64,000 bases of DNA from Mizuhopecten yessoensis (lineage: Eukaryota). Under the pieces are notes generated by a model. That model ran no database searches and was not told where the DNA came from. It worked only from the letters and a program-made list of their open reading frames with translations. Of this stretch, positions 16,650-64,000 are shown in pieces. The position numbers and the translations under genes were made by a program. The stretch lies in NCBI RefSeq assembly GCF_002113885.1, contig NW_018408827.1, positions 105,553-169,552 on the forward strand. The letters run 5' to 3'. Within the stretch, counting starts at the first letter, position 1. Each line of letters begins with the position of its first letter.

Positions 16650-18880
16650 TGATATGTTCCTCCACTTGAATGTGTTACACCCTGTTCATTGTGTATATGG
16701 TATTATCTGATATGAAACATAGCATAATACTGTTTACAAATATGTACGTAAGGGAAAATGTTTGCTTGCAACGATTAAGAACCGGCACCAGATATGTAAC
16801 AAATAATTAACCAGCAGATACAAGAAGGCTCCAGACTTTATAAAAGAAACGTTTTTCATACCAGTTAGCCTTTAACTATGTTGATATGGCATTTACAGTC
16901 TCAACGAATTCATAGCTTTGTTGCGCACATGAAAATTTGTTTGATAGCAAAACTGTTCCCTTTGTATAAGATTATATTTGCCAAATCAAAACAGTTCAAT
17001 GCGTATATTTACCATTTAAGAGTATTTTAATATCATAAATTAATTAATATACTTTTATTAAAATGCTGGTTATAGTTCAAATTAGTGAAAGTATTGTATA
17101 TGCCTGTGCATTGAAAAGTAAAGCCCTCTTCTAAAGAGGGTAAATGGTTTCAAACTTTACGGTTATTACGACATAGCAATGATGACGTCAACACGTGGAT
17201 GCCACCTGGATTGGGTAGGTTTATATAGCGACATACAGTGGTAAAAGTACGACATGTTTAATATTAACAATACTTACATATATACCTTTGACAGGAATTG
17301 AGCAATAATTTTAACTGAATATAATAAATATATGCAAAATTGACTACACGTAATAAATAGCTGCACGATTAATGTTTTGTTCATATCAGTTGGTTGCGTA
17401 TATTTAATTGTAATAGTTTTTTATATGCGTTAATAATATATGTTAAATTTCGTGGACTTCTGCTAAGTGCACAAAGTTTGTTTCGTTACATTTATATAAG
17501 ATATAACCCGAAAAGCATAGAAAATACCTAGACACATCTGTAAGACATGTATTCCCTCTTGGCCTTGATAAACTAGTTTCATTGTTTGATAATTATCTAT
17601 CACTAGTACATGTAACAATGGCTTTGATCCAGTTGACCTATATATAGCAGTGACATTGACGTTCACTTTGGTACCCTGGAATACGACCTCATGGCCTCTG
17701 TATAAACTTTGAAACAAATATTTTATGTATTCTCTTTTCGGCAAAGGAAGTAAGAGTTGTTTCCCTTTTATTGTAGTGATTCTAATGCGACCAATTTCTA
17801 TAAACTGGTAACGTTTAAATAACTTGAAATCATAATCTTACTGGAAATTCATCACGTTCCTTCCTTAGCAATATCTTACAATTCGTGTGGATTCCCGTTC
17901 GCTGTTTCAGTGATTTGTTGTTCTCCGCTTTCGCTTTTGGTTTCGGCTAACCAGGAAATGTCGGAAACCTTATCGAGAGGACCGTCAGTATGATGTAATC
18001 CTGAGACAGACGTAAGTATGAATTTAGCATTTATTTAATGATTAATGATGTTTTCTAATGCAATTATTTGTTGTGTGTGTTAATAAAGTTTTTTGGATTA
18101 TTTGCTGTGTGTAGCCAATTATGCAGGCCTACAGTCGACTCAAATAGAGAGGACTTTGTAAATTGTGAAGGGGCGGGTGGCGGGTGTTTAGATTTCAAAT
18201 CACTTCCGGGATCGATCTCATATTATAATGTATATTCGTTGCATTATGTAAGAGTCACAAAAAGTAGAATACTGCGTTTGCTAATGTCAAGTGATGCACC
18301 TCTAACTTCAATTGTGGTTTCAGCTTTTTTCCTGTAAGTGTGTGCATGTACATAACAGCCACTTATATTTATATATCTGGGTTTAAAAAACCAAGCATTT
18401 ACTTTTGCTTTTCTTCTCAGGAAAACCCAACAAGATTTTGTAAACCAGTAGGTTTATGAAAACCCAGCATTCAATGACACTACCACAAATTTTGTATTTA
18501 TAATTTTATAAATCAATCATATTCTGTCCGAAAAGCATGTGCACGCAAGCTTGGTTATTTATTTATTTATTTGTGTAAACCAGTAGGTTTTTGAAAACCC
18601 AGCATACAATGTCATTAGCACAACATTTTTATTAAAATTTTATAAACCAATCATATTCTTTCCAAAAATGATATGCATGCAGGCTGGGCTATTTATTTAA
18701 CTAAACGTGAAACAACCAATTAGAATTGAAGAAGTCTGAATCAAACTTGGTCAACCAGACGAAAGAGTTAATGTCAATGATGACCTCCAGTCAGTGATAT
18801 GATTACTTCAGTAAATTATTAAATATTGCTGAATAGCTTTTTGGGTTGTTAGATATATCTTTTTGATTAATTAAAGAGAA
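16650..18880 (+). promoter_or_regulatory. Upstream/promoter block and probable non-coding exon 1 of IFI44-like copy A
   Basis: Collinear with 52810-55455 upstream of copy C. It contains TGACGTCA+CACGTG (17183-17197), the IRF-E/ISRE-like gctttcgcttttggtttcgg (17927-17946) and a conserved GTAAGT donor at 18012. Confidence 0.7.
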
Positions 18881-20159
18881 GAGGTCAAGTAAGCTGAACA
18901 TATATGTGTGTTTAGTAAGGAAGGGGTTTAATTGCAATGTACAAATTAGATCGGAATAGGTAAACTTATGTTTAATGTTATGGGGCTGTAACTAATGTAT
19001 TCAAAACCCATACTATGCTAGTATTATCGACGTATTTATCATTAATCATATTATAGAACCATGTTTTGCAATTCATTGTACTTTTTAATTTCAATCCGCT
19101 TACAAGTCCTGCGATTCAACACTGCATACGTAATATTTCTAGTTATATACTGAAATACAATATATCCAAAGCAATTATTAAATGAATGGATGACAAACAA
19201 CTTTTGCAAAGTTAATTGGTTACAATCAATGTAAGAAGAAAAATTATACTCACAATAGTTACTGTCAATAACTTATGAAACAAGCTAATCTACTTCTCTA
19301 AAAGAAAAGATAATGAAAAAGATTACAAACTCTCATCATACATTGAATGTTAAACTAAAGATTGACCCTGATTTAAATCGGTTATCTCATATTTGTACGA
19401 CTATGTACATGTATAATGTATATCCAGTACACAGAAATGAACATCTGGTAATAAGATGAAATATATTTTCAGTTATTGGAGTAGCCACATTTAGAATATT
19501 GTCAGGACCAGGACGTGTCAAATAATCAGTGACCAGGTCTATCTAAAGTTATAAAACGAACAACATAGACACAAGGAAATTTAAGACATTTTATAATGAA
19601 ATAGATCAGCTGAGATAACCTCTTAAGTCAACGTCTGGTTTTGAATACGTGGTTTCGAGTTACTGATAACGCCGCATGTGTGCAAAACATCAGCCAGGTA
19701 AATGCTATATGTTCCCGCTTTCGGTACACAAAACACATGTACATGGATTCAGGTTCACGCTGTGATTACAATCTTTATAATAATATAAAGGCTTTATTTA
19801 TTTATTTACATATTAAGCATGAATCTAATCTTATATATGGTCAAGATACAATGTATGATAAAATGTACAATATTTACAGTTTTGGGTGACTGGATATATA
19901 AACTCGTCTTGTACACGCATTTCATTTGCTGTCAGTCAAATCCTCTACAGCACAGCACGAATTGTATCGTGATATCTTTCGACTCACTGAGCTCTGAAGT
20001 GCAAACACAAAGACACTCTCTGGAAGATTCAACAATTGGAATGATATACAACTAACAAATAATTTACGTATACACTTATAACTAACATAGGAAGCTGTCT
20101 TAAAGTTAACCAAGACATCACAAGTGATACAGATCCTCTCATTCACACATTGCGACATA

Positions 20160-21342: not shown

Positions 21343-24300
21343 ATGACGACCAAGCTAACGCAGACCCACACGGATCAACTTTCCAAATGGATTGACCCGT
21401 CAAAAAGCCATGCGTTTACTTTACTGTACAAGATCAGCCGTGACGGATTTAACGCTCAGACTTTCTATCGTTACTGTGACAACAAAGAGTCGACCGTCAC
21501 CGTCCTGTACAATACAAATAACTCAGTGTGCGGAGCGTACACAGCTGCCAACTGGAATTCCAACAGTTCATGTATCACCGATGCATATGCATTCTTGTTT
21601 AGGCTAGAGTATAACGGTACAGCACAGCCGATGAAGTTTCCTAACACAAGTAGAGGCGGCACAAACGCGATTTACGGGGATGCAGGTTATTGGCCAACAT
21701 TTGGATGTGGGCATGACTTGCACTGCTTCAGTGGAACTGTAAATAGATCCGGTAATTATTTCCGATTGAATGGTTCTGCCAGTATAGGCTATACGTACAA
21801 CATGCAGGGACAAAACTACAACACTGTGATGAACGGTCATCTACAAGTCCTGAATCTGGAAGTTTACAGTGTTCGAGGTAGTTGTTAAATTGAACATGAG
21901 GCTTAAACTGTCAGCCCTTCGAATGCATGTATATATAAACATTCGAAGGGAACAAAAGGTAACTAGGTGACAACATTGGTTTGGATTTCTGTCGAAAACT
22001 AGTTTTTTGTGAAAATCTCTTTAATTATTGACAGATTTTATCTAAAGAAAAGCGATTATAATATTATGACATAAAATAATATATCGGAGAGTTGTTCAAA
22101 CAGTTTTGAGAAGTTCTCAATAAGATATTTTAGGAGGAATGAAAAAAAGGATTTTTACAAACAAAAATAAAATGCAAACAAATATACCATAAATACCAAA
22201 ATCACTTGCGTTTAACAAAATTGATATTTTGTTGTATACTTCATCGTAAACTACGACTGGAATGAAATCCTTCCAAAACAAAATAACTACACAACTATTC
22301 AATATAATTCAAAATAAACCAAAGATCCGGATATCACAAATTAAAATACCAAAAACTTGCCTTCATAAAGCAAAACGATATCAATGTAATTGCAACGCCA
22401 TAACAAGATAATTACCAAGGAATAACAAGGTAGTGACAACGCAATGACAAGGAAATAACCACGCGATAACACGTTAATAACAATACGATAACAAGCTAAT
22501 GACAACGCTATAACAAGGTAATGACAAAACGATAAAAAAAATAATGATCAAGGAATAACAAGGTAAAAACCTTGCGATCACACGGTAATGACCACGCGAT
22601 AACACATTAATAACCACGAGTTAACAAGGTATTAACCAGGCGATAGCAAGGTTATGACCATGCGATTACAAGGTAATAACCATGTAATAGCAAGGTTATA
22701 ACCACGCGATAACAAGGTGATAACTACGGGATAGCAAGGTTATAACCACGCGTTAACAAGGTAATAACTACGCGACAACAAGGTAATGATAATGTGATTA
22801 CAAGGTAATGATCACGCGATAACAAGATAATAACAATCCCATTATAAGGTATTGAAAACGCGATACTAAGGTTAAGACCACGCTGTAAAAGGTTATTACA
22901 CGTGTACCACGCGACTTACAATTTGAAATACTTATGTATTTAATCTTTTTATCACCTTTTTAATAGCCTTATATATTGAAATACAAAAAGGAAATGATTT
23001 CTATCAAGCTTCGTACACTCACAGGCAGTGCATGATAGTCACAGTTGTTAGAATAGATCCAACGATATAATGTTATATAATTTTAATGTTTTTGGTACAG
23101 AGAAAGAAGTGAAGGAACAGATAGAGGAAGAAGAATTACTGCAAAGTAAGAAAAAAAAACAGATCATGGAAAAGCCATGGATGCGTAATATCGACTGGAG
23201 TTCCTCCGTATGTATAGGACTTGTTTGATAAATTTTGGAAATTTATTGATTTACGTAAAATGTGTTGTTGCCTGTGGGCATCACTTTGAACATGTTTTAA
23301 AAAATCAAATAAATCGATTTATTTAATAAACTGACACATCAAAATATGGCAGTAATTTTTAGGATCACTTTCAGGATGTTCTCTTTTTTTCCGAGGTTTA
23401 AAACACCTTCAAATCTCATTTTGATCTAGTTTAATTTTTTTTTAATGAAAACTGAAATTCTGAGCAACCTTGAAGCCAAATTTGTATCTGAAAAACGTGT
23501 CTAAAATAGATGCCTATCGCTTGCATACCGCTTTATAAAAAATCAACTAAATCTACGCCATTTGGATATCCCAAAAATGTGTATTTATTAACGTTTTCCA
23601 TTTTAACATAAGATATATCGCTAAAAGCGTCACTGTGTCGCCATTCTTAACTGTAGCAGATTGATGATTGTTGCGCAAGTTTTACTCATATGTCAAAACA
23701 AGTTTGATACAGGGTTTTATAACTTCGAACGGAAGTACATACTTTAAGAGAACTTACTGTTGTGGGTTTTCTTGTAGTTAAAGAGGTGGTCGCTTGCTAT
23801 GTTTTCTGTGACCTCGTTGTTAATGAACCTCAAGCGTTTAGATGTGTATAAATAAAGTTTTACCGATATGTTTTGCATAAAATTGTAAAATTAAAACAAG
23901 TATATAACGAAGAAAGATATTTCCGCTTTAACTTAGTATATTTTATCAGTACTTCTCTAAGTCTTCAAATTCATCAATTAAGGGATGATTTTACGAACCT
24001 GCCGCTCTATTTCAAAATTGGTTAAGACTAATTTTAATTTCTAACTTTCTGGTCCCTTGCATCACCGATTAGTCCTAAAAGGATGAAACAGCTGTATGAA
24101 TCAGTATACTGTAATTTATATTTGGCATACTAGGTACATGTACTCATTAGTCAAGAGCAATGCTGTCTTTTTCGTTTCGATTTCAATCTATAAATGACGG
24201 ACGTTTATTTTGATTAGACTTTTGTGAGAAAGAGTTTATTATTAATTTATGTTATACATACAGTTTGGGAAAGAGATAAAGAGCAAAGTGGCCACCTATA

Positions 24301-27300
24301 AACCATTATCCGGACTAGATCTCCAGCAGGCGAGGATCCTGTTGGTCGGTCAGGTCGGATCTGGGAAGTCCAGCTACTTCAACACCATCAACTCCATCTT
24401 CCGGGGACACATCAGCGCCCAGGCCAACGCTGGCAGCGCTGAACATAGTCTTACAACATCTGTGAGTATAACTAGAAATATGTCAAAATGACATGAAAGT
24501 CACCCCATCTCCTGTATAATAAATCATTGACCAAGCTACAACTGACAGATTTGCACCTGTCAATCAAAATGGTCTGACAATGACTAGGTGTATATGCATA
24601 CACGCTGTTTAGGTAACCATGCCAACACATGGATATAATAATAAAGCATGTGGTTGATTTACTTGAAGAAAATGTTCTGTGTTTTATGACCATAAAACAC
24701 TAGCGCTGCAAATAATTTCATTTGTTTTATTTCTGTGACATTCTCTGGCCTTCTGCATCCCAATTTCAAGGCCTTCCACATTCAAGCGGGCCGAAGTGCC
24801 AAGATGAGATATTACATCTGTTAAAATGAAAAACAAATGATATAAGAGAACTGAACATGCATATTAGAGCAAATCATTTTCACCAAAACTAAAGGCTGAT
24901 AATTTAGGAATTTCCCATCCCTATCACTAATTTGTACTGGTATTGTATTGATGGTTATTTGTCTCCATATTATCAGTTGATAATTCTCAGTAAAAATAAT
25001 TTGTTGGTAGTATGTCAATGTATTCACATATTAAAACATTAATCGGTGGCACATATAATTATCGGCAAATTGTCGTCTCGATCAGAGTCAATTAACCCAT
25101 TATCCTTTGTTATCTGTCCGTCAAGTTTTCATTTAAAATCCTTCTCCTAAATAACACCTGGCCATGCTACAGGGAATTGACTTCCTGAATTATTACAGTT
25201 AGATCCATATCCAATTACCATGTATACATGTACATACATTTCTTACAATGGTTGCTCCCAATGCCAAGTCGATCCCTGGGGAAACGGTTGTGATCCCCAT
25301 ATATATACATGTATGTATACACTAAAAGGATAAAGAAACGCAGGGTAAATATTTGAGGTGATTTATGTTATATTGAATGTTATATACAATATTTTATGTT
25401 TTGATCACAACGAAACTTGTCATTAAGCATCATTGACTATACGTACCTAGTAGTCAATTGTTGAATAAAGAAAACATGTTACTTATTGAGATCAGAGAGG
25501 TTATACAAAAAGGAGTAACTTGCAGATTTTAAAATCTTTAAAAGCCGTCTCCTCATGTTCAGAAAGTTGAGCATATTTCAATCAAATTGGTTAGGAAGCA
25601 TTCCTGGCATCAGGGCACACGAAGTGGTCACCCATTACAATTGGTCTCTTAATATACGTTTAGCTGTTACGGAATAGGAAGATTCAAAACTGGTTTCTAT
25701 AAACAAGTGGTATCTTTATATAAGTGGTCTCATGAGCAGGTTTGACTTGATTACTTCTGGTGAGATATTTGCCATAATTGCTTATACATCCAGGTTAGCA
25801 ACGGGTCATGTGCGCCTCTTGTTACTAAACTAGGTTAAATCAAACTATGGTCTGGTTTACGTGAAACTAGGAAAGTTGATCATATGAAACTATGAACTGG
25901 CCCATATAAACAGTGAAAACGAACGTAAAACACATACAAATGTCGTTGCAAACGGTTGGTAATATTTACAGATGCCAACAAATGCATATAAGTGACACTG
26001 CATCATTAAGCTGCTTCGTACCTTTAGAGTTATTGATGATGGTAGGGGCCAAAACGTGTTTAAATTTGAATTTAAATTTTAAGTTTCACTATTATGAACT
26101 GGCTCAAGTTGATCTAGAAACTGGGTCACGTTCTCGTTAAGGTTCTTTTTGAATCCTCTGCATTTGCTGATTCAATTTCAAGTTGAGTAAGCATTTTTAT
26201 TGCTTTTAGTTTCTCTATTTTGCACAATTTAGTACAGGACATATCAGGTAATGGACGGATATGCTGGGAAACCTCTCAACTTTCGGTTATGCGACACACG
26301 TGGTCTTGAGGAAGACCAAGGTCTTGATGATCACGATATTGACTATCTACTTGAGGGTCACGTGCCAGACAGGTACAAGGTGAGTGTGTAGGTTTCTTTT
26401 TACAAACAATTATCTGTTTTTGTTTCGTGGGAATAGTTGTGCTTAACTTGAATAGTATCTACATATAGAATGTATATATATATGTATTCAGTGCGTTAGT
26501 CTGTCCCACCGTCTATCTTTCTGTCCATCAGTGGAGGGAAGTTTTTCAATAGTACTGCTACTTTCTTCCTGAGGCATATTTTATTTAATTTTGTTTATGT
26601 GATCAACTAAAAGTTGTGTGCTTGTGGTTATTTGTATTTAAGCTATTTTTTTTTAGAGTTATGCTCTTTTTCTGGTCTTTTTTATTTGGGAGGATTTTGA
26701 TTAGCATTGACACACACAGGCCATGTGCAGATTCTGTTAAAGACTAGTTAGGCAATTGCAGCAGAAATACTTATTGTATTGTAGCAGTGTTTTGAGTGTT
26801 CTTTGTTAAGCAAATACTTAGCAGTGATTAGAACATTTCCAGGAGTTATTGTTTTTGCTGCTCAAAAGTATATGCGATTGCCAGGAATAGTTTGGAAACA
26901 TTCCGGAATTGATTCTTATCAACATACAACCATCTAGAGGTTAAATACCAGGTGATGTTATCCATATTGATACAGTGTAATTTTAGTGCTGGTGTGGCTA
27001 CATTTTAGTTACAAATGAACAAACAGTTTTTCAAAAGAATATTTTTACTAGTGCCATGTTAATCTTAAATTCTCCATCATCTGCCGTTGTCTGTACTTAA
27101 ACAAATCATGTTTTGGCTATTTCTAAAGAGTACCGGACAGATATTTATCAAATTCGATATGCGGGTTTCCCTCTGTACTTGGTTGTGAATTTAACATTTA
27201 GAGTTGGATTGTAAGAACGAAATGGCCAAAAGCCATTTGTTTAAAATTTTGACATTTTGTTTATTTTTTTCATTTTTGAGGAAGTTCGGCGTAGTTCTTC

Positions 27301-30300
27301 ACATAAGTTCCCTTTTATGCATTTAGAGACTGATTCGAGGACCAAAATGGTCGTCATTCAGCAATCATCGATTTTGACAATTACAATTTGCTATCTTTAT
27401 TTTTTCAAGAAGTTTACAGATATTTTTGAAATTTTGATATGTATTGGTCTTCAGAAATGTGTGATCGATCAACACACCATATTACAATAATTAAGATTAT
27501 TTTCAATTTTACAATGCATGTTACACATTATTACAGTGACCGTTCAGGAATAGGTTTTGCTCCAAGGTAACAGAACAGGTAAATTTAAATAACAATTTTT
27601 GACCAGAGTTTTACCTGGCCTGTGCCTGACACATAGAGTTGATATGTAATACCGTATGACCGTTATGAGAACACAACTGGACGTTTAGTATTTGTTATTT
27701 GCATTCGGTTTGGCCTATAGCTCCCCTTCACCTGGAATTTTACACCCCGACGAGTTACGTTAGTGCCCCGGGTGAGGAAAACTGCGGTCCGGGTACCTGT
27801 ACAAAGTGGCTACATTTTTTTTTTATGTTAACCTGTATACAGTACTGTGTTGTAATTTTGCATGTGTCGATTAAGGTCGTTTAAAAAACACCGAAAACAC
27901 CATTTCTAAATCTAAGAAAGTATAAACAGAAAGATAATTTTATAGATGTAACTAGAATATAGAAACATACTTAAAAATCAAGTTTTTCTGTTTAAACACG
28001 AAACTGTTTATATTATTAAGCCATTCCTCAATTTACACCAACCACGATTGCTATTGCACAACGTTCGTCCATCGTGCGCACAAACGTACACCCATCGTTC
28101 GTACACCACACATCGTGTAACGTTGTGTGATCACACAACTGTAAGAGTACATGCATTCATTTGACTCTACTACTTCACCTGATATGTTGATTTCGTTTGA
28201 GGCACATGGTCAATTACAAGTAGCAATGCTTCACAAAATGAAGGTTTTTTCCCTTTGATTTGGTTTTTAAAGTAAATTCTTTTTAAGCATCTTTGGCGCG
28301 GCGACTTTGTATTTGTAAGTAGCTTCCTACGATGCAGATCGACAAAGTCTGCGAAAAAAATACTGTATTTTAAAGCTTTTGAACAGCAATGACCAGTATT
28401 CGTGATTAAACTATTTAAATTGCTTTTCTTTTTAACAAAACAGAGTCATGACGTTTAGCAAGCAGCTTGTTGGCCTTGAATCCTATTTAAGTCCGCTAAC
28501 TTAAAACGACTTTAAGGGGCTAGAGGCGTCCCATGCAAAGGAACCTTGAAAATGAATGATTTTGACTCGCTGAGATTGTGTCTAATAACTGAACGGCATG
28601 GGGTACTAAACAGTTTGCTAAACAATATAATCTCGATCTATGTTCATGGTTACAAGGGACAAATTTGATCCTTTTTTAAAAATAAAATAACGTTGGCAGA
28701 ACTAAGTCCTATTTTCAGAACATTTGGCTGGTTACACTTCTTCGCATTGAATACTACGACGTTTACATGAAGGAGATAACTTTTCTTATATTCAGGACCA
28801 CGTTGGTCAAATCTATTAAAGCCTAAACTATTTCTTCTGGATAGTCAAGAGGCATTGAAAATTGTAAGGGCTACCAGTTTGTTCAAAAAGAATAACCTTG
28901 ACTCACGTTCAGGGTCAATTTCAATCATTGTATACCCTGATGACAGCACGCTTATCAGACTGCAACATGTCGTCCACCAGGTAAAAACTTAGAAACAGGC
29001 TTCAACGTTTGGTACGTGTGATTTCTACATTCATGTCTCAATTACAGAGGACACTGTGTATTTTAAGGCATTCTCCTATAACCAAGGAGATGAACTACAA
29101 CACGTTGTGGACTTACTGGATATTGGTTGTTTAAGGTTTCGTATAAATACAGTTGTGGGACCGCACAACGCACCAAAAATAGCGTGCGCACACCGTGCAT
29201 ACATCGTTCACACACCGTCCGCACATCGTCCACACATGGTGCGCACAACTGTGCGATTTAGCAATCGTTCGCCCCGTTGTGCGCTTCTCTCTGCACAACT
29301 GTGCGATTTGGTATCATTTTTAGATCAAAATTCCGGAATGACAAAAATACGGCTTGTATGCGATAATGTACACTGTGTATATATCTGTAATTTCTCATCA
29401 CAATAATCAAGATTATACAATTTCACAATGCGTGTTACACAGTATTACAGCGACCGTAAGACTGTCAAGAATGGGTTTGGCTCCAAGGTAACAGAACAGG
29501 TAAATAACAATTCCACGAGTGTCCGGAGTTTTACCTGACCTGTGCCTGACACACAGAGCTGATATGCGATACCGTTTGACCGTAATGAATAGTATTTGTT
29601 ATTTGCATTCGTTTGCCTATAGCTCCCCTTCACCTGGATTTTCACACCCGCGGCCTTACCCGACAAGTTACGTAAATGCACCAGGCGGGGGAAAACTACG
29701 GTCCAGGTACATGTACAAAGTGGTTATGTTTACCTGTATACGGGATTGTGTTGTAATTTTACATGTGTCGATTAAGTTTGTTAAAAAACACAGAAAACAA
29801 AATTTCTAAATATAAGAATAAATAGGCAGAAAGATAAGTTTATAGATGTTGCTAGAATATAGAAACATACGTAAACATCAAGTTTATATGTTTAAACACG
29901 AAACCGTATAAATTGTTAAGGCATTCCTCAATTTACACCAACCACGATTGTTATCGCACAACGTCCGTCCATCGTGCGCACATATGTGCGCAAGCAATGA
30001 TCGTTCAGCTTTTTATCGTTCGCCCATCGTGCACACACCGTTCACACACCGTGCACACATCGTGCACACACCGCACATCGTGTAACGTTGTGCGATCCCA
30101 CAACTGTACCACTCACTATGTACGTATTTGTATTTGCACCAGTTCAACCCTGCTGTTCCACTATCGCCAGACGAACCTGGGTTTGTGAAGAACCCGACAT
30201 TGTCCGATAGAATCCACTGTGTTGCATTTGTCCTGGATGGTAGTACTGTGGATGTCATCCCACAGAAAGTGATGAAGCGAATCAAGTCCATGCAATTGCG

Positions 30301-52809: not shown

Positions 52810-54736
52810 TATGTTCCGCCACTCGAGTACATTACACTCTGTGTGCAGTGTACATGTATATCATATTCTCTGATATAAAACATTTCGCTATCATAAAGTT
52901 GAAATATTTTATTGTTGAAATGTTATAAAATAAGCATGCTTACTTTGAGGGATTCTCGTCCTTTAACATAGCAGTGGCAAATTTAAAACCAAGGAGTTCT
53001 GTATCCCTTGCGATAGAACTGGGGGAATAACATTATATTTGAACCAAAATACGTGAGTCTAAATTGTACCATATGCCGTTTACTTCACAATGTATATTAA
53101 TATGTACGTCAGCGTGTAAACATTTGCTTGCAACGACCAAGAACCGGCCACAAGATATCTAACAAATAATGAACCAAACACAAGTATGATCCAGAATTTA
53201 TTAAAAATTAATGTTGTCTATACAATTTAGCACATAACTTTGTTGATATGGCATTTACAGTCTAAATGACTGAAACAGCGTTGTAGCGCACATGAAGATT
53301 GTTTTGTTGGCAAAACTATATCATTTGTATAAAATAATATTACCATATCAACACAGTTCAATACGTATATTTACTCCCTTTTTTAGTATTTTAATATCAT
53401 AAATTAATTAAAATATTTGTATAAAAATACCGCATATAGTTCAAAATGGTGAAGGTATTGTATATCCTTGTTCAATGAATAGTACACCCCTGTTCTAATG
53501 AGTGTCATCAGTTTCAAACTTTACGGTTATTACGTCATATAAATGATGACGTCAACACGTGAGCCATTGGATTTACAGTCTAAATTAATGCCACCTGAAT
53601 TTGGTAGGTTAATACGACTTTAAATGATTTTTTAACTCGTGGAATATTTACCATACTTATATTTATACCTCTGAGAGGAGTTGAGAAATTATTACGAACT
53701 AAATTTATAATTATATGCAAAACTGAACGACGTAATTAACAGCTGAACGATTAATGTATTTAATTGTAATAAGAAGGGAAATATTATATACCTTTAGTTC
53801 AAATCAAAGTTTTTATTGGCGGATTTATGCAAAGTGCAAAAGTGGGATTTTTCGATAAATACGATATAACCCCGAAAACAGAAAAAATATCTGTAAGATA
53901 AATAATGTATTCCAGCTTGGCACTTTCAAACTCGTTTAATTTTTTGAAAATTTGCTATCAATAGCACATGTAGCAATTAATGGCTTTGATCCAGATGACT
54001 TACTGTATAAATAGCAACAGTGACTGTGGCGTTGACCTTGGTACCTTACGAACTCATGTAAGGTTTTCTTGCATGACCTTCGCATAAACTTTGATGAAAA
54101 TCTGTTATGAAATCGCTTTTCGGCTTAAGGAAGATAGAGTTGTTTCCCTTTGTGTTACTAGCCTTAGAGTGACCGATTTCTACACGCTGATAACGTTTAA
54201 ATAACTTAAGTAATAAACTCTGGTATCTTGTATACTAAAATTCCTCTCGTTCCTTCTTTATCAATATCATTCAGTTCGTGTCGATTCACGTACGCTCTGT
54301 TTCGGTGATTCATTGTTATCCGGTTTTACTTTCGGTTTTGGCTTTCCACGAAATTAGGGAAATACCGATCAGGAGGATCGTCATTATTTGTTAGAGCTAA
54401 CACGGGAAGTAAGTATGCATTTAGCATTTATTTTATCATCAATGTTGTTTTCAAATGATGTTTTCTTGTGTGATTATTTGCTGTGTGCAGCCAATTATAT
54501 TAAATGTTAGATTGTTTACAAATGCAGGCCTACAGCGATCAGGAGATGACTCGAGTAGCGAGGACTTTGTACATTGTGAAGGGGCGGATGTCGGTTGTTT
54601 AGAATTCAGATCGTTTCCTTGATAGATCTCATATTATAATGTTTATTATTTGCATTATTTAAGAGTCATAAAAATGGAAATGCTACTTGTGCTAATGTCA
54701 AATCATACACCTTTAACTTCAGTTGTGGTTTAAGTT

Positions 54737-54809
<73 letters not shown>

Positions 54810-56759: not shown

Positions 56760-59700
56760 ATGGCGACAGAGCTCACACAAGCCCACAAGGATCAACTTTC
56801 TAAATGGATTGATTCCACTAAGAACCACAAGTTTACCTTACTGTACAAGATCAGCCGTGATGGATGTGTAGCTCCAACCTTCCATAGTCTTTGTGACAAC
56901 AAGGGGCCGACAGTCACCGTCCTGTACAATACTGACAAGTCGGTATACGGGGCTTACACTGCTGTCAGCTGGCATTCTAATGGTGCCTATAGCGTCGACG
57001 CTAAAGCGTTTCTGTTTAAACTAGAGTATAACGGTACAGCACAGCCAATGAAGTTTCCCAACAAAACAGGCGGAACAAGCGCAATCTATGGGGATGCGAG
57101 TTATGGTCCAACATTTGGCGGACATGACCTTCATTCTTTTTCTGCTACAGTGAACAAATCCGGAAATAATTTTCCTTTAAATGGTAACACCAACGCATTC
57201 GGAGGAACCTATGACGTACAAGGGCAGAACTACAACTCTGTGATGAATGGTCACTTACAGGTTCTGGACCTCGAGGTCTACAGTATCGAAGGTAACACGG
57301 GGCACATCCATTAATACTGATTTTGAATGTTAAATGCTTGCAAACGTCTACTCATTGCATCAAAGCTATGTAATTGAGGTATTCTTGATAGTGGCTGTTC
57401 TAGATCCTCCAAATGGCTGGTAAAATAAACTATGGTTTTCAATGTTTATAAAGTAAATCAGCCAAAACAAAGTGATTCAGTGAAAAAATGAATTTTTGAC
57501 GCATAAATGATATACATGTACGTTATGATATAAAAATGCATTTTAGAATGTAAGTACCAGGGTTAAGTATGAATGTTGGGTTTGCGTAACAGTAATATTT
57601 GAAATGACATAATATATGTTTTGAAGCTGTCTGTCTGTCTGTCCAACAATAATATTTTTTAAAGAAGTACATGGCTTATGCTCATGTCAATATTATCTCT
57701 CCATCTGACTACTTACAGAACAGGAGCTGCTACAAAAGCCGTGGATTCGGAATGTGGACTGGAGTCGTAAGGTCTGTAATGTATACATATATTTGTATAG
57801 CAGTATTTGTATAACTGTAATGTATAACAGTATTTACGTTTTAAACTGTTTAGATGTATCGCTGTATTTCACTTTTTTGTTGTTATTTTTTAGATTGATA
57901 ATGATAACCGATTAATTAGGCATCTATATCAATCATAGAAAAACAAGCATTTCAGTAGAGTAAATATTGTGAAATGGTGAAAATTATATTACTTTGAACA
58001 TTATAGTACAGGTATTATGATAAGTCATGCGTCATACGTAAAGTACTCTTTTCAGCATTCGCGATACTCACTTCCTTTCTCTGCACCCCTGGAATATGTC
58101 ATGACGAAATTGAAAGCTATTAACTTGGCACTGTGTGGATGAGACAAGAAGATAAGTTTGATCCTTTGATGTACTTCAAAAGATCTCGCGATCGCATACC
58201 GGTAAAACTAGCTGTGTAGTCGGGTGTCGCCTTCACCAAAATCAAATAACTTTATTGCGCATTCAATTTTGCTATGACATATTCCAGCATAAGTGACCGC
58301 AATCTGTCTAGTATCAAAGATGTCCATGTTACATAGTTTAGTAGACCATAAAGTAAATAATGCGTGTTTTCCTACACAGAGTGAAAAGTACGGCCAAAGA
58401 GGGTTTAACCATGGTCAATTATAGTCGGTCAGTTACTATAAATGGACAACCAAATTGCAACAAAACCATGATTTAAATATGGTCTAACTTACATTTGAAT
58501 ACTTTCACATACATATCTTTATAGTCCTTCATCTTTAGAGTGCTGTTCATAATCAAATTGTTCTCCGTCCGTAGTCGTTCATCTTTTCACAATGCATTGG
58601 ACAGATATCTCTCAAATTTCATATAAAGGTTTCCGTTGTTCAATATTTGTGCATTTTGTTTTCTTTTAGACTAAACAGGAAATCGAGATGGCCGCCAGGC
58701 AGCCATCTTGGATTGTAATAGATCAAGATTAATACTTCTTTTTCTCAAGACGTATAACAGATCTTTCATGAAGGTTATCCTTGATTGGTAGTTGAGCATG
58801 TTTCTTTATGAGACTGTTTTGAAAAACAGTATGACAACAAGGCCGTAATCTTTTATTCTGACAGCTCGAGATGGTATCAATATTTCACAAAATGTGTCTG
58901 ACAGAATAAAATTTTTTAAATTTCATATGTATGTTACAATATTCCCTTCGACATCGGTTGTGCATATTTTATTTTGAGACTAATCAGGGGGAAAAAAAGA
59001 ACAACAAAAGCTGACTGTAAAGTATATCTAAATACACATATATATCAGGTTGTTTTTTTATAAATGAGCAACCTGTACTAGCTGTCAGTTGTAATGGGGC
59101 TAGCTTTGGTGCTTACTGCATTAACAGATGATTTTTTTTCAAATCTTGTGTCACACAAATCACTGCTGCCATAGTCTGTGTTGATGCAATTATCTTAAAT
59201 TGAAATGCCTTCTAAAACTTTACACAATAATGTATGCCTTCTTCCAAAGTATCATTGTAAGCCTATCGCTCACTGGGTTATAGCCATTTGTATATATCGG
59301 CTTCATAAGGCATTGATTGGTTCATTCTATATTCAAAGTGGGATAAGAATTCTCGGACTTCTTTTGACGACATTCAGTTTATGATGAGGCTTTGTAGAAT
59401 CGTTTCAATTTTGGCAAGTATGATGGAGTATGGTCATGTCAGGTGTCACCATGGTGGTTGCTCGTGGTCAGTTAAATGAGCATGGGTGATTATATGTGAC
59501 CATGGTGTAATTTGTTTTATCTCCAAAACAGATACATTAACGGGATGTGAGTAGCATCGCTGCTTTCTAAGAAACAAAACAATTCAGATAATAAGATCTC
59601 TAATTAATCTAGTTTCTTGGTATACAGTTTGAGGAAGAGGTAAAGAACAAGGTGGCCACCTATAAACCGTTACCCGGATTGGACCTCCAGCAGGCGAGGA

Positions 59701-62386
59701 TCCTGTTGGTTGGTCAGGTCGGGGCAGGGAAGTCTAGCTACTTCAACACCATCAACTCCATCTTCCGGGGACACATAAGCGCCCAGGCCAACGCTGGAAG
59801 CGCTGAACATAGTCTTACAACATCTGTAAGTATAACATTAAATAGCAAACCAAAACATGTGTAACATTCTTTTGAATCTGCATCATGACGTCAAAGACTA
59901 GGCCACTTCTATTTATTTTTTATTTATTATATTTTTTATGAAACAATTGGATCAGCAGATCAGTTCCATGTTTTCAATGTTTCATGTGAAAAGGTTACTA
60001 AAGAAAACGATTCAGCATATCTGTAGGGACCGTAATAAGGCATATGGTGATACAAAATGAAGTAAGACAGAAGAAATGACTTGAAACATGTCAACGTTCC
60101 AAGGATGTTTAAACAGCTGAACCTGTATCAAGTCATAAGTATGAGTGATAGTGCCCAATAAAATATTTTGATAGTTATAACATACAAAAATGCCAATCCG
60201 AGGCGTATATTTCACAAGAATGCCATGTCATTGCGTGGTATTCATTGTCTATAAACCCATCTCACCTCGTCATCTCTCCATCAAGTCTACATTTAAAAGC
60301 CTTCTCCTGAATAAGACATAAGATTTGAACTAAGTTTGGTTGGCATGATCATAAGTTCAATGAGATTCAATCTTGTATAGATAAAGGGGCGTGCCGGAGA
60401 GTTTGAAATATCCTTTCAGCAAAGTGATTATAATTTTGCATTCATATAGTCGGTATGACCTTTGAGGTAGGTGGGATATAGTGCCCTTGAATTGGGGGAT
60501 TTCGGATAATATAGGGCTGTACCACTGGGATCCAATTATATAACCACATACATTCAAAGTGGGCATACAAAACGAATTTGAGCTGGGGTTCACCCTTCTG
60601 ATGGACTTAGTCTGAAACTGCATATATCGTCGATGGGCACAAAGTGGCAAACAAATCAATATATCATCTAAATCAGGATTTATCCTAAGGTCCGTCTTCT
60701 AGAGTTTCTGAGTCAAAACATATCCAATATGGAAATCCGCACCTTAACGCCATATTGAAATTGCTAGGCATGATGGAATGTATGAACTCATGCTAACAGC
60801 ATTTGCCAATGGGCCCAGTCCTGCCACAGAGGTTTGATTTTCTGAGTAATTACACAGATATAATTGGATCCCTATTCCATAACCTTATATACGTACATTT
60901 GTTACAATGGTTGTCCTATGGATCCCTGTTGAACTGTTTTGACCCTCAATTTATACATAAGTATATTCATATTGATCACAACCAAACTTATCATTAAGCA
61001 CCATTGATCATACGGACCAAGTGGTCGAGTTTTGAATTCAGAAAGTATTAATTTTGTTGAGGGCTTAGATGTTATATTCAAAAAGGAGTAACTTGCAGAT
61101 GTTTAAGTCTTTAAGAACCTACTCTTCGTGTTCAGTAAATTGAGCATATTGTAATCACACTGGTTAGGAGGCTTCCCTGTAATTAGGGCACACGGTTTTT
61201 TGATAATGGAAAGTGTCGTCTCCTTCAGTGCTGAGAGGCGAACCAAAAATAGGAAAATGTTTGTAGTACACTACAATCAGACCTGTTTTATAGGTCATCT
61301 TCAAGAGAAGTCCAAGAAGTGGTCAATCATTGTAATTTGTCTCTATATAAACGTTTAGCTTTGATACAATAGGGTGCTTTAAAATCAGTTCCATTAAACA
61401 AGTGATATCTTTATAGATGTGGTCAGCAGGATTAGCAGGATTACTTCTGATGAGCTGTTTATCATAATTGCTTACACATCCAGGTTAGCTAAGGGCCATC
61501 TTCGCCTCTTGAATTGTAGTGGATCAAACGAAACTGTGAACTGGCTAACGTGAAACTAGAAACTACTATAAACTTATGAACTGGATTTCATGAAAGTATG
61601 CAATGGCATAGATGAACTTGAACTGATTTACATAAAACCTTTTACTACATTAAAACTAGGTACTTACTCAAGTGAAAAATGAACGTAAAACACACACACT
61701 TGTGATTACAAAAGTTTGGTAATATTTACAGATGCCAAACATGAATGACACTGCATCATGCAGCTGTTTCGTTCTTTTAGAGTCATCGGTAATAGTAGGG
61801 GCCAAAACGTGTTTGAATTCCAATAGGTCTAAACTGCTGTTGAAAAAAGAAAAACAGTCAATGTGGCTATCAAATGGCAAACTCCAGGGACTAAGAAATC
61901 CACCAGCAGAATCTACCACCTTGTACAAATGTATCTTGAAGATGAAGGTAACACACAAGCAGGTGTTTGCACCTGAAACTATGAACTGATTCACATGAAA
62001 CCGTATACAACCTCAGGTAAAACTTAACACATGTATTGACTTATGTAAAACTATACTGGCTTGATAAATTATGAGGTGACTGAACTATCAATATTATGAT
62101 CTGGCTCAAGTTGATCTAGAAATTGGGTCATGTTCTCGTTAAGGTACTGGTTCTTGCTGAATTCTCTGTATTTGCTGATTCAAAATAAACTTGAGAAAGC
62201 GTAATTATTGTTTTTCTCTCTCTATTTTGCAACGTTTAGTATAGGACATATCAAGTAAGGGACGGATATGCTGGAAAACCTCTCAACTTTCGGTTATGCG
62301 ACACACGTGGCCTTGAAGAGGACCAAGGTCTTGATGATCATGAGATTGGTTATCTACTTGAGGGTCACGTACCAGACAAGTACAAG
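56760..62386 (+). CDS. IFI44L: IFI44-like copy C (TLDc + GTPase-like), 3' exons beyond window end
   Basis: Exons 56760-57291 (TLDc), 57719-57771, 59628-59825 (GQVGAGKS) and 62240-62386 (DTRG) are open and phase-consistent. The last two coding exons are expected after 64000. Confidence 0.88.
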
Positions 62387-64000
62387 GTGAGTGTGTATGT
62401 GTCTTTGTACAGACAATTACCTGTGTTTGTTCCTGGGGTTAATATGTTACAAGCCATTCGTTTCTTTTTTATTTTGACAGATTTCGTTTTTTCCTCACAG
62501 CTGTCATGCGTTGGTTCCCTTTTGTGCATCTACATAGTGCATTTCGAAACTGATCGGAGGACCAAAATGGCTGCAAGACCGACATCTTGGATTTTAAAAT
62601 GAAATTTGCTATCGCGTTTTTTTTAAACAATTGACAGAAATATTTGATTTTTTTTAAACTTTGATATGGTTTGAAGGTTCCCCTGGTCTTTAAATAATAT
62701 GCATGATCGATCAATACATCATAGGTCTGAAGTTTTATCAGAAAGGTGCAATACACATAGATATAAGTAAAATTCAATTTATGGGTGGTGGAAAGTATTA
62801 TTACGAGTAGTTTCATTACGAAATTAGAAAAATAACAGAAAAAACGCCCAAAGATATTTGATTATTGCTTTAAAAATATTCAGTGTACATGCATTCATTT
62901 GATTCTCCTACCTCTGCCGAAATGTTGATTTCATTTGAGGCATATACAAGAAGCGGTTTATTACAATTAGTAATGCTTCACAAAATGAAGCTTGACGTTT
63001 GAGCATTTGATTTGGTTCGTAAAACGTCTTCTTGTTAAATACCTTTGGCGTTGGGGCTTTTTATTTGCTAGTGGCTTCCTGCTATAAAGCTTGACAAATT
63101 CTGCAAAATATACTTTGACTACATTTTAAAGTCCCAGTAGTCAAAATGTGAAATGGGATTTCAGACAATAAGTTTGTAAACAGCAATGACCAATATTGAA
63201 AATCAAACTGTTTATATCGCTTTTCTGTTTTTTAGAACCAAACAGCACAAAGTCATCGCGTTTGGCAGGTAGCATTTGCGAAATGAAATGGTCCCGTCTC
63301 TTACTAAAGTCCTCAAACTTTAAACGTTAGAACAGAAGGAGCTAGATTGGTAATATTTGGTTACTAACTTTCTGGCGTTGAGTGCAAAGACAATTATTGA
63401 AAATAAATTATTTTGAATTAGGACAAAGTGATCAACTTTATTTAAATGCTGAAATGGCTTCCAATACTTTAACGGCATGGAGTACTAAACAGTTGGTTTA
63501 ACGAAATAATCTTCATTTATGTTCAAGGTTACGGGGTCCTTTTTACAAAGATTAACTAACATAGAAAGAACTAAGGCCTAGAGTCAAAACATTTGGCTAG
63601 TAACACTTGCTAGCATGGAAAGCTACAAAATTTGCATAAAGAAAATAACTTTTCTTATAATCATAGTCAATCGGGTCCAATGTGTTACAGCTAAGACAAT
63701 TTCTTCTGAATAGTCAAGAGGCATTGGGGAATGTACGGACTACAAGTGTGTTCAAATGAATAACCTTAACCAAATTGTAAGGTCATAGGGGTAAAATACA
63801 ATCATTAAATAGCCTGATGACAGCATGCCTAGCAGGCTGCAACATGTCGGCCACCAAGTAAAAACTGGAAACCAGGCCCCGGAATCTCGAAACATCTTTA
63901 ATTCTCAATTCTTAACTTTAAATTCCTACGCTAAGTACATACTTAGCTGATAAGTTCTTAAATGGTGGATCTGAAAGGCGTTCTGAAATATTTGAGAACG

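What the first reader, a model, noticed from the sequence alone, without database searches (positions are those of the whole stretch)
16650..64000. Tandem IFI44-like (TLDc-GTPase) array whose three members appear to be diverging: tail-anchored, truncated and canonical forms
Seen: three head-to-tail copies with the same exon architecture. Copy A has a linker extension and a hydrophobic C-tail, copy B a premature stop that removes the G4 (TKID) half, and copy C is canonical as far as it is visible. Established: IFI44/IFI44L are vertebrate interferon-stimulated genes, the family is expanded and virus/poly(I:C)-responsive in bivalves, and other TLDc proteins (OXR1, NCOA7, TLDC2, TBC1D24, MEAK7) bind V-ATPase. 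Inference: the locus could be a co-regulated antiviral module producing membrane-anchored, soluble and GTPase-dead variants of one effector in an animal without recognisable interferon.
Basis: partly seen in the sequence, partly recalled or inferred. Interest (0 to 1): 0.75.

Follow-up and report, generated by a model that had tools for sequence, protein, structure and literature searches.

The report
Scallop IFI44-like gene array, birth-and-death
Three neighbouring copies of a known antiviral-type gene (IFI44-like) are part of a larger, partly decayed scallop gene array; one copy looks freshly broken, and another is transcribed with a new greasy tail, made from former untranslated sequence, that could pin the protein to a membrane.

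Summary
Three + strand IFI44-like (TLDc + GTPase) genes share six coding exons, all with AG/GT splice sites. The exons tile a 470-aa scallop IFI44-like protein end to end.

- **Not haplotypes:** dS between copies is 0.57-0.87.
- **Copy A:** it has an 18-codon longer exon 2 and a 20-residue hydrophobic C-end.
- **Copy B:** one TCG>TAG nonsense codon sits in exon 5, but its TKID exon is still intact downstream.
- **Copy C:** complete and canonical once read beyond the window.

The window cuts an array of at least seven copies. Three look intact (A, C, D) and four look broken or truncated (B, B', E, F), which is ordinary birth-and-death evolution.

B lacks the non-coding exon-1 block shared by A, C and D. 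Its duplicate B' is deleted, and skipping exon 5 would shift the frame. B is most likely a young pseudogene.

A's tail arose by small 3' indels that removed a conserved C-terminal motif and the stop codon, so the frame reads into former 3'UTR. An independent DNA run and RNA contigs from two runs carry it. A also shows relaxed constraint and a possible frameshift allele.

Similar hydrophobic tails occur in IFI44-like proteins of a pearl oyster, a freshwater mussel and a sea anemone. Earlier scan notes cover lipid-anchored IFI44 GTPases elsewhere in this genome, not this array.

The parts
17850..18011 (+). Copy A: conserved non-coding exon-1/promoter block, ending at a splice donor (GT at 18012). 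It carries ISRE-like half-sites.
   Evidence: 76% identical to blocks upstream of C (54245-54457) and D. The donor GTAAGTATG is conserved. No such block was found upstream of B, B', E or F.
21343..21877 (+). Copy A coding exon 1: start ATG plus TLDc domain.
   Evidence: Pfam TLD E 6e-20. Ten private, mostly radical replacements at sites invariant in the paralogues.
23101..23207 (+). Copy A exon 2: linker of 35 codons against 17 in B and C. It contains an A9 run.
   Evidence: The extension is homologous to copy E's exon 2. Haplotig L027 has A8 here, which is a frameshift.
24264..24461 (+). Copy A exon 3: P-loop (G1, GQVGSGKS).
26233..26379 (+). Copy A exon 4: G3 (DTRG).
30143..30314 (+). Copy A exon 5.
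   Evidence: The 30314|31585 GT..AG joint is seen in an RNA contig of run X20. That junction sequence is shared with paralogues.
31585..31940 (+). Copy A exon 6: G4 (TKID), C-terminal helices, derived tail, stop TAA at 31938-31940.
31870..31937 (+). Copy A derived tail: 23 codons, of which 20 are hydrophobic. It replaces the conserved C-terminal motif.
   Evidence: Homology to C, D and E ends at 31869. Positions 31917-31983 match D's 3'UTR about 300 nt past D's stop. KD 2.82. Identical in the DNA run X1 contig. Present in RNA contigs of X19 and X20 with the frame open.
40336..40867 (+). Copy B exon 1: TLDc.
   Evidence: Pfam TLD E 8e-22.
43609..43661 (+). Copy B exon 2.
43853..44053 (+). Copy B exon 3: P-loop.
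44369..44515 (+). Copy B exon 4: G3.
46143..46314 (+). Copy B exon 5, with in-frame TAG at 46164-46166.
   Evidence: A has TCG at the same codon, and the other copies have Ser or Ala. No second B-like exon 5 exists in the assembly.
44479..44715 (+). Copy B: left arm of an inverted duplication. It covers the end of exon 4, its donor and the start of intron 4.
   Evidence: 99% complementary to 49051-49288.
47188..48963 (.). Copy B intron 5: 32-bp minisatellite, about 55 copies.
49051..49288 (-). Copy B: right (inverted) arm of the duplication, in intron 5.
49908..50218 (+). Copy B exon 6: TKID, intact, canonical C-end, stop at 50216-50218.
54245..54408 (+). Copy C: conserved non-coding exon-1 block (donor GT at 54409).
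56760..57291 (+). Copy C exon 1: TLDc.
   Evidence: Pfam TLD E 5e-23. 80% identical to the Argopecten protein.
57719..57771 (+). Copy C exon 2.
59628..59825 (+). Copy C exon 3: P-loop.
62240..62386 (+). Copy C exon 4: G3. Exons 5 and 6 lie beyond the window, at window-relative 65448-65619 and 66683-66993.

Best explanation
The window shows the first three members of a tandem IFI44-like (TLDc + P-loop GTPase) array of at least seven copies, evolving by birth and death in a scallop.

Copy C, and its recent duplicate D outside the window, are the working canonical genes. Each encodes a soluble protein of about 470 aa.

Copy B is a recently disabled gene:
- A single TCG>TAG change stops translation after about 318 residues, before G4.
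- No first-exon/promoter block like that of A, C and D is detectable.
- Intron 5 is rearranged.
- Its mRNA, if made, should be removed by nonsense-mediated decay.

Copy A is intact and transcribed. Small indels at its 3' end removed the family's conserved C-terminal motif and stop codon, so translation runs 23 codons into T-rich former 3'UTR. This gives a 504-aa protein whose only hydrophobic segment is its last 20 residues.

Such a tail should be captured by the BAG6/GET triage system (inferred). The protein would then either be inserted as a tail-anchored protein with TLDc and GTPase facing the cytosol, or be degraded. A is a young, lineage-specific variant under relaxed constraint, not a designed third isoform.
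For: Architecture and family.

Array size and state:
- A, C and D are intact.
- B has a nonsense codon.
- B' has lost exons 3-6 by a deletion of about 7.5 kb inside a [B-C]/[B'-D] segmental duplication.
- E has no TLDc exon, and its exon 2 is out of frame.
- F has a stop in exon 3 and TNID in place of TKID.

Selection:
- Pairwise dN/dS is 0.11-0.30, and dS is 0.57-0.87 among A, B and C.
- On the A branch of the GTPase exons there are 9 replacement and 8 silent changes. C, D and E pooled have 17.5 and 39.5.

Copy B:
- TAG at 46164-46166.
- No exon-1 block.
- Joining exon 4 to exon 6 reads VYPKWYC then a stop.

Copy A's tail:
- Homology to C, D and E stops at 31869.
- Positions 31917-31983 match D's 3'UTR at 82%.
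- No paralogue has the tail, nor do 16 short mollusc homologues. Those share a K-x-x-x-[LM]-x-[IV]-[RK]-[ED] end instead.
- KD is 2.82 over 20 aa, and A has no other hydrophobic segment.

Reads:
- The DNA run X1 contig is identical over 31800-32199.
- RNA contigs of X19 (632 nt, depth 116) and X20 (2424 nt, depth 89) run through the tail and stop with 3 and 2 differences.
- Two of those differences fall in the tail (Ser>Leu, Ile>Lys). Neither creates a stop, and no indel is listed there.
- C-type and D-type exon-6 contigs occur in the same runs at depths of 261-1112.

Literature: hydrophobic C-tails from non-coding translation are taken by BAG6 for degradation or membrane targeting (PMC10364623).
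Against: - B's stop was not checked in reads. It could be a rare allele or an error, and B's remaining ORF is clean.
- The TAG also creates a possible in-frame alternative acceptor (ATATAG|CCT) 24 nt downstream of the normal one.
- A-specific RNA evidence covers only 31800 onwards. Upstream exons are cross-mapped by paralogues, and both RNA runs come from one study.
- One RNA-seq run (X23, 19% of it read) has no reads on A's exons.
- No protein data exist: membrane insertion, stability and function are all inferred.
- Tail-bearing IFI44-like proteins in other animals suggest the tail could be more than an accident.
Confidence: 0.55

Rival explanations
1. Copy A is also on its way out. The hydrophobic tail acts as a C-terminal degron (BAG6/proteasome) or is simply tolerated, and A contributes no distinct function. 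The locus then holds one working gene (C) and two decaying ones.
For: - A lost a C-terminal motif conserved across molluscs.
- A has 13 private replacements at sites invariant in the paralogues. Ten are in TLDc and many are radical: C>F, GP>ES, G>W in the YGPTFG motif.
- The A branch shows a replacement-to-silent ratio of 1.1, against 0.44 in C, D and E.
- The probable haplotig L027 carries A8 instead of A9 in exon 2, a frameshift. Its pN/pS against the reference is 0.39.
- A's RNA depth is 5-10 times lower than that of C and D in the same runs.
- Most non-coding-derived hydrophobic tails cause degradation.
Against: - A's ORF is fully open across 504 codons with canonical splice sites and intact G1, G3 and G4.
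- The A branch is still below the neutral expectation (binomial p = 0.04).
- A is transcribed, and the tail frame stays open in three sampled haplotypes.
- C-terminal hydrophobic tails recur in IFI44-like proteins of other species.
- The A8 run in a 4-kb unplaced contig may be an assembly error.
Confidence: 0.25
2. One reading: a co-regulated antiviral module that deliberately produces membrane-anchored (A), truncated GTPase-dead (B) and soluble (C) forms of one effector, with B's TLDc-plus-half-GTPase product acting as a regulator.
For: - A, C and D share a conserved exon-1 block with ISRE-like half-sites.
- A, C and D transcripts co-occur in X19, and A and C in X20. All are absent from X23.
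- B versus B' shows 11 replacement and 10 silent changes, fewer replacements than neutrality predicts.
- B's exons downstream of the stop are intact.
- Oyster IFI44 is induced by OsHV-1 (PMC4111845).
Against: - B lacks the shared exon-1 block.
- Both B-type copies are independently disabled.
- The stop lies 148 nt before the last junction, which predicts NMD.
- The strict ISRE consensus GAAANNGAAA is not enriched in the window (7 found, 4.7 expected) and is absent from the block.
- The array holds further broken copies, as expected from neutral turnover.
- No expression data exist for B.
Confidence: 0.1
3. B's stop is an assembly or sequencing error, or a rare allele of the sequenced animal, so B is a normal canonical gene in the population.
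For: It is a single base change in an otherwise clean ORF. It was never checked against reads, and bivalve heterozygosity is high: about 2% between A and its haplotig.
Against: B's intron 5 carries a recent inverted duplication and a 1.8-kb minisatellite. There is no exon-1 block. The sister copy B' is clearly dead.
Confidence: 0.1

Closest known systems
Mollusc 'interferon-induced protein 44-like' genes, for example Argopecten irradians XP_069123068.1 and the oyster IFI44 used as an OsHV-1 response marker
   Same: Same TLDc + GTPase architecture. The six exons of A, B and C tile the 470-aa Argopecten protein at 60-94% identity. Hits are named IFI44-like in Mytilus, Dreissena, Gigantopelta and Pinctada. 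Oyster IFI44 rises after herpesvirus infection (PMC4111845).
   Different: Copy A has a longer linker and a hydrophobic C-end in place of the conserved charged C-terminal motif. Copy B carries a nonsense codon.
Vertebrate IFI44 / IFI44L
   Same: N-terminal TLDc followed by a GTPase domain with a TKxD-type G4. Fish IFI44-like proteins match exon 6 at E 1e-9 to 3e-10. IFI44 is the one TLDc protein with the domain at the N-terminus.
   Different: Only 33-38% identity in the last exon. Interferon control is not established in molluscs. The vertebrate proteins are soluble (my knowledge).
IFI44-like predicted proteins with a C-terminal hydrophobic segment: Pinctada imbricata KAK3105694.1, Sinanodonta woodiana KAL3861466.1, Nematostella vectensis XP_032220527.2, and two unnamed contigs
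   Same: A hydrophobic stretch (KD19 of 2.1-2.5) sits directly after the same GTPase C-terminal helices. Five of 145 cluster representatives have one. In P0028 the tail also starts where the canonical end would be.
   Different: The tail sequences are unrelated, so these are independent gains. The Nematostella protein has no TLDc domain and the Pinctada model is partial. All are gene predictions without experiments.
mEAK7 / yeast Rtc5p (lipid-anchored TLDc proteins on lysosome or vacuole that bind V-ATPase)
   Same: A TLDc domain held at a membrane. The TLDc exon of C weakly matches mEAK7 chains solved on V-ATPase (E 1e-3). TLDc proteins are V-ATPase binders (PMC8608904).
   Different: Their anchor is N-terminal myristoylation, not a C-terminal helix. 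They have no GTPase domain. V-ATPase binding by IFI44 is not reported in the papers read.
GIMAP/AIG1 immune GTPase clusters (from my own knowledge, not tested here)
   Same: Tandem clusters of immune-associated P-loop GTPases in which some members are tail-anchored and others soluble. The P-loop exons give weak sub-threshold AIG1 hits.
   Different: A different GTPase family. No Pfam AIG1 match reaches threshold, and GIMAPs have no TLDc domain.

Membership tests
IFI44 / IFI44-like | N-terminal TLDc domain (Pfam PF07534) | tested here: met
   Exon 1 of A, B and C scores 72-82 bits against a cut-off of 24.5, at E 6e-20 to 5e-23.
IFI44 / IFI44-like | C-terminal P-loop GTPase domain with G1 GxxxxGKS, G3 DxxG and G4 TKxD | tested here: met
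   GQVG[SA]GKS in exon 3, DTRG in exon 4 and LTKID in exon 6 are present in A, B and C. In B, G4 lies downstream of the stop.
IFI44 / IFI44-like | Full-length colinearity with proteins annotated as IFI44-like | tested here: met
   The exons cover residues 1-470 of Argopecten XP_069123068.1 in order. Named hits come from molluscs and fishes.
IFI44 / IFI44-like | Induction by virus, poly(I:C) or interferon-type signalling | not tested
   The only data are presence in two RNA runs and absence from one, with conditions unknown. ISRE-like half-sites are present, but there is no strict consensus.
Tail-anchored membrane proteins (copy A) | A single transmembrane-length hydrophobic segment at the extreme C-terminus | tested here: met
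   The last 20 residues have mean KD 2.82 and are preceded by K/R residues.
Tail-anchored membrane proteins (copy A) | No signal peptide and no other hydrophobic segment | tested here: met
   The maximum 19-aa KD in exons 1-5 is 1.07 or less. The N-terminus MTTKLTQ is polar.
Tail-anchored membrane proteins (copy A) | Post-translational insertion with the N-terminal domains cytosolic, giving a stable membrane protein | not testable with these tools
   This needs fractionation or imaging of the tagged protein. BAG6 triage can equally end in degradation.
Pseudogene (copy B) | A disabling mutation in a conserved ORF | tested here: met
   TAG at 46164-46166 against TCG in A. Exon-5 skipping shifts the frame. 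This was seen in the assembly only.
Pseudogene (copy B) | Loss of promoter or first exon, or of transcription | tested here: inconclusive
   The exon-1 block of A, C and D is not found upstream of B. A different first exon cannot be excluded, and no reads were laid on B.
Pseudogene (copy B) | Neutral substitution pattern (dN/dS near 1) | tested here: not met
   B against the other copies gives 0.14-0.28, and B against B' gives 0.28. Any inactivation must therefore be recent.

The most novel reading that the evidence does not exclude
Copy A is a selected, working tail-anchored TLDc-GTPase: an antiviral-type effector newly tethered to ER or endomembranes by a transmembrane helix born from its own 3'UTR. 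It would be one of several independent gains of the same architecture in IFI44-like genes (pearl oyster, freshwater mussel, sea anemone). Membrane tethering would then be a recurrent adaptive theme for this poorly understood family, possibly bringing TLDc next to V-ATPase.
Probability: 0.25. Interest if true: 0.6.

Novelty: new variant of a known kind. Interest (0 to 1): 0.35.

Why it matters
IFI44 and IFI44L are widely used antiviral markers, in people and in farmed bivalves alike, yet their mechanism is unclear. This locus adds no new system. It is a lineage-specific array of a known, already annotated family, with the usual mix of live and dead copies.

Its one useful twist is copy A. It is a natural, transcribed case in which a small indel turned 3'UTR into a transmembrane-like tail on a TLDc-GTPase. 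Independent parallels exist in other invertebrates.

If the tail proves to work as an anchor, it gives a simple handle on where IFI44-type proteins act (membranes, V-ATPase). It would also be a clean example of how new membrane anchors are born. If it does not, the locus is a textbook case of immune-gene turnover.

Tried and rejected
- **Uncollapsed haplotypes for A, B and C:** rejected. dS is 0.57-0.87, and exon DNA identity is 73-90%. A separate 4.3-kb contig (L027) is a probable haplotig of A's 5' part only.
- **Rescue of B by the inverted repeat looping out exon 5:** rejected. The repeat is real, but joining exon 4 to exon 6 shifts the frame to an early stop.
- **Strict ISRE search (GAAANNGAAA):** 7 hits against 4.7 expected, and none in the conserved upstream block.
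- **Word-based protein search with exon 6:** it could see only proteins of 65-206 aa. It therefore gave family names, but no same-species or full-length relatives.
- **RNA depth on A's exons 4-6 as a measure of A's expression:** rejected. The variants show those contigs are C-, D- or E-type. Only 31800 onwards is A-specific.
- **Second B-like exon 5 in the assembly:** none was found.
- **Literature search for tail-anchored IFI44:** nothing relevant. Another search was uninformative.
- **Megablast of the intron repeat against phages:** a pointless check, with no hit.
- **Joined spliced protein models:** All searches and all dN/dS sums were made exon by exon.


Full report
**What is there**

ORF listing and translated self-comparison show three + strand repeats of the same six coding blocks. 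Reading the boundaries base by base gives the three models:
- Copy A: 21343-21877, 23101-23207, 24264-24461, 26233-26379, 30143-30314, 31585-31940.
- Copy B: 40336-40867, 43609-43661, 43853-44053, 44369-44515, 46143-46314, 49908-50218.
- Copy C: 56760-57291, 57719-57771, 59628-59825, 62240-62386.

Every intron is GT..AG, and intron phases are the same in all three.

Family assignment rests on four results:
- Exon 1 is a TLDc domain (Pfam PF07534, E 6e-20 to 5e-23).
- Exons 3, 4 and 6 carry G1 (GQVG[SA]GKS), G3 (DTRG) and G4 (LTKID).
- Exon 6 finds proteins named 'interferon-induced protein 44-like' in Mytilus, Dreissena, Gigantopelta and fishes.
- The six exons of each copy tile the 470-aa Argopecten irradians IFI44-like protein XP_069123068.1 from residue 1 to 470.

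**The organism**

The runs are coded 'organism A'. The best full-length relative is from a scallop. Earlier scan notes call this genome Yesso scallop. The assembly size of 987.6 Mb in 82,659 contigs fits my memory of that assembly. I did not verify the name.

**The window shows only part of the array**

The window is C5500:105553-169552. With flanking DNA fetched, the same contig holds, in window-relative coordinates:

| Copy | Position | State |
|---|---|---|
| A | from 21343 | intact, altered C-end |
| B | from 40336 | nonsense codon in exon 5 |
| C | to 66993 | complete and canonical |
| B' | 73144-86868 | B-like fragment, truncated |
| D | 92455-102760 | C-like, intact |
| E | 119237-125300 | no TLDc exon found; exon 2 out of frame with the A-type acceptor |
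| F | 133727-140400 | stop in exon 3; TNID instead of TKID |

Further relatives lie on other contigs. Blocks [B...C] and [B'...D] are a segmental duplication at 84-95% identity. Within it, B' has lost the part from mid exon 3 to beyond exon 6, about 7.5 kb. This is a birth-and-death array with three intact and four damaged members.

**Not haplotypes, and not simple decay**

I computed Nei-Gojobori counts per exon and summed them, without building a joined model.

| Pair | dS | dN/dS |
|---|---|---|
| A-B | 0.78 | 0.21 |
| A-C | 0.57 | 0.19 |
| B-C | 0.87 | 0.16 |
| C-D | 0.16 | 0.18 |
| B-B' | 0.08 | 0.28 |

A is a mosaic. Its TLDc exon is nearer to B (dS 0.60, against 1.55 to C). Its GTPase exons are nearer to C, D and E (dS 0.28, against 0.85 to B). 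That points to exchange between paralogues.

**Copy B**

- The stop is a single TCG>TAG change at 46164-46166. The other copies have Ser or Ala at that position.
- Everything else in B, including the TKID exon, is open.
- The predicted product is about 318 aa: TLDc plus G1-G3.
- The stop lies 148 nt upstream of the last exon junction, so nonsense-mediated decay is expected (inference).
- A 237-bp inverted duplication, 99% complementary, places an inverted copy of the end of exon 4, its donor and the start of intron 4 into intron 5. It sits next to a 1.8-kb minisatellite of 32-bp units.
- Skipping exon 5 would not help. Joining exon 4 to exon 6 reads VYPKWYC and then a stop.
- B has no counterpart of the conserved non-coding exon-1 block found upstream of A, C and D.
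- The TAG itself creates ATATAG|CCT, a possible in-frame acceptor 24 nt downstream of the normal one. It would delete 8 codons, including the conserved FNP motif. This is untested.

**Copy A**

*The linker.* Exon 2 has 35 whole codons against 17. The extra part is lysine- and glutamate-rich and holds an A9 run. It is homologous to exon 2 of copy E.

*Origin of the tail.*
- All six other copies end in a charged motif, for example KMQHMKIRD. The same K-x-x-x-[LM]-x-[IV]-[RK]-[ED] end appears in homologues from other molluscs.
- A's DNA homology to C, D and E stops at 31869.
- A multiple alignment suggests an 8-bp gap plus substitutions over the old stop.
- Positions 31917-31983 match D's 3'UTR about 300 nt beyond D's stop (82%, E 7e-15).
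- The last 23 codons are therefore partly former UTR. They are 48% T.

*Properties of the tail.*
- The final 20 residues have mean Kyte-Doolittle 2.82 and follow K/R residues. They are A's only hydrophobic segment.
- Among 41 open pieces of at least 19 aa read from paralogue 3'UTRs, only 2 exceed 1.6.
- The chance of 23 open codons at this base composition is about 0.17.
- Such a tail is therefore uncommon after a random frameshift, but not extraordinary.

**Reads**

I laid four runs on 26200-32199.
- **DNA run X1** (2022, a different study from the 2016 runs) has a contig identical over 31800-32199 at single-copy depth. The tail is not an assembly error.
- **RNA runs X19 and X20** (one study) have contigs of 632 nt (depth 116) and 2424 nt (depth 89). 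Both begin at 31800 and contain A-specific coding sequence. They run through the tail and stop into the 3'UTR, with 3 and 2 differences.
- Two of those differences lie in the tail: 31918 C>T (Ser>Leu) and 31936 T>A (Ile>Lys). Neither closes the frame, and no indel is listed there.
- **Upstream exons are not A-specific evidence.** The RNA contigs laid on exons 4 and 6 carry C-, D- or E-type variants. They show that canonical copies are expressed in the same runs at depths of 261-1112. They do not show A's level. The 30314|31585 GT..AG joint confirms the exon 5-6 splice for the family, but its sequence is shared between copies.
- **RNA-seq run X23** (19% read) has no reads on any exon here, only on an intronic repeat. 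Expression is therefore conditional.

**Is A healthy?**

- A has 13 private replacements at sites invariant in the other copies. Ten are in TLDc and several are radical: C>F, GP>ES, and G>W in YGPTFG.
- A 4.3-kb unplaced contig (L027) is 96.6% identical to 20155-24458 across its whole length, introns included. It is most likely the other haplotype.
- L027 keeps the ancestral residues at four of those TLDc sites but has radical changes of its own. pN/pS between the two is 0.39.
- L027's exon 2 has A8 instead of A9, which shifts the frame. This is either a null allele or a homopolymer error.
- In the GTPase exons, A's private changes are 9 replacement and 8 silent. C, D and E pooled have 17.5 and 39.5 (Fisher p = 0.15). 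A is still below the neutral expectation (p = 0.04).
- Overall, constraint on A is relaxed but not absent.

**Relatives with tails**

My novelty claim rested on the absence of tailed relatives, so I ran the exhaustive profile search with A's exon 6.

Of 145 new cluster representatives, five carry a hydrophobic segment (KD19 of 2.1-2.5) directly after the same C-terminal helices:
- Pinctada imbricata KAK3105694.1.
- Sinanodonta woodiana KAL3861466.1.
- Nematostella vectensis XP_032220527.2 and its isoforms.
- Two unnamed contig ORFs. In one of them (P0028) the tail also begins where the canonical end would be.

The tails are unrelated in sequence, so these are independent gains. All are predictions only. 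A literature search for tail-anchored IFI44 found nothing relevant.

**Mechanism**

*Shown:* the gene structures, the family, the array, B's stop in the assembly, the origin of A's tail, and A's transcription through the tail.

*Established elsewhere:*
- TLDc proteins bind V-ATPase (PMC8608904). IFI44 is listed among TLDc proteins, but no V-ATPase test of it is reported in the paper read.
- Oyster IFI44 rises after herpesvirus infection (PMC4111845).
- Hydrophobic C-tails made from non-coding sequence are captured by BAG6 for degradation or membrane targeting (bioRxiv 10.1101/2022.07.20.500724; PMC10364623).

*Inferred:*
- C and D act as soluble TLDc-GTPases.
- B is a young pseudogene.
- A's protein is either inserted as a tail-anchored protein with both domains in the cytosol, or is destabilised by the tail.

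**Verdict**

The family and its expansion in bivalves are known and annotated. The 'three-form module' is better read as turnover in a larger array. The only real novelty is a transcribed, UTR-born hydrophobic tail on one copy, whose function is open. Interest 0.35.

Noticed in passing
window 29148-30108 (also 27481-28143, and inverted at 36269-37178): A dispersed repeat of about 960 bp in A's intron 4 and in the A-B spacer. It contains 11-bp CGTGCACACAC-type repeats. DNA k-mer depth reaches 9e4 against 10-13 for single-copy sequence. It is transcribed on both strands in all three RNA runs, and loose ends at 29147/8 and 30108/9 mark its borders.
   Followed up: partly
window 44479-44715 and 49051-49288: A 237-bp inverted duplication, 99% complementary and 4.3 kb apart, brackets B's exon 5. 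The right arm is an inverted copy of the end of exon 4, its donor and the start of intron 4. It could form a long double-stranded stem in the pre-mRNA, but exon-5 skipping would shift the frame.
   Followed up: partly
window 47188-48963: A 32-bp minisatellite of about 55 copies at 85% match in B's intron 5. It creates long spurious minus-strand ORFs.
   Followed up: no
window 17900-18012, 54300-54409, and window-relative 89792-89986: A conserved block upstream of A, C and D ends in a shared GTAAGTATG donor, so it is probably a non-coding first exon. It carries TTTCGCTTTT/GGTTTCGG and GGAAA..GGAAAC half-sites. The strict GAAANNGAAA consensus is absent from it.
   Followed up: partly
L027 (G000:C82622, 4282 bp) against window 20155-24458: A probable uncollapsed haplotig of A's exons 1-3. 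It is 98% identical in introns yet has 11 amino-acid differences in TLDc. Coding divergence (2.8%) exceeds non-coding divergence (2.0%). An A8 run against A9 in exon 2 shifts the frame.
   Followed up: partly
window-relative 119237-125300 (copy E) and 133727-140400 (copy F), outside the window: Copy E has A-type exon 2 homology but no TLDc exon upstream, and its exon 2 frame is shifted. Copy F has a stop in the P-loop exon and TNID for TKID. Both are further decayed members of the array.
   Followed up: partly
window 22376-22883: A 22/44/66-bp tandem repeat (ATAACAAGGTAATAACAACGCA-type) in A's intron 1. It is not coding in any frame.
   Followed up: no
window 11440-12221: A 52-bp-period minisatellite at about 92% identity. 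It gives repetitive spurious ORFs on the minus strand.
   Followed up: no
window 3797-5947 (+), and 8950-9204 and 14564-14986 (-): Upstream neighbours. Exon-like ORFs on the + strand give weak, sub-threshold sulfotransferase hits. On the minus strand there is a signal-peptide-bearing ORF with a CCAPDQFEG motif, plus an ORF with a weak Ependymin hit. This probably means a sulfotransferase gene and an ependymin-related gene.
   Followed up: partly
window 32030-32300: About 90 nt after A's stop, the 3' flank enters a dispersed repeat with more than 60 copies at about 70% identity across the genome. The X20 RNA contig continues about 2 kb further downstream, so A's 3'UTR may be long and repeat-rich.
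   Followed up: no
P0025, P0022, P0168, P0028, P0059 (other species): IFI44-like predicted proteins with C-terminal hydrophobic segments occur in Pinctada imbricata, Sinanodonta woodiana, Nematostella vectensis and two unnamed contigs. P0028 has a near-identical canonical sibling (P0008). This suggests that tailed and canonical paralogues coexist in another bivalve.
   Followed up: partly
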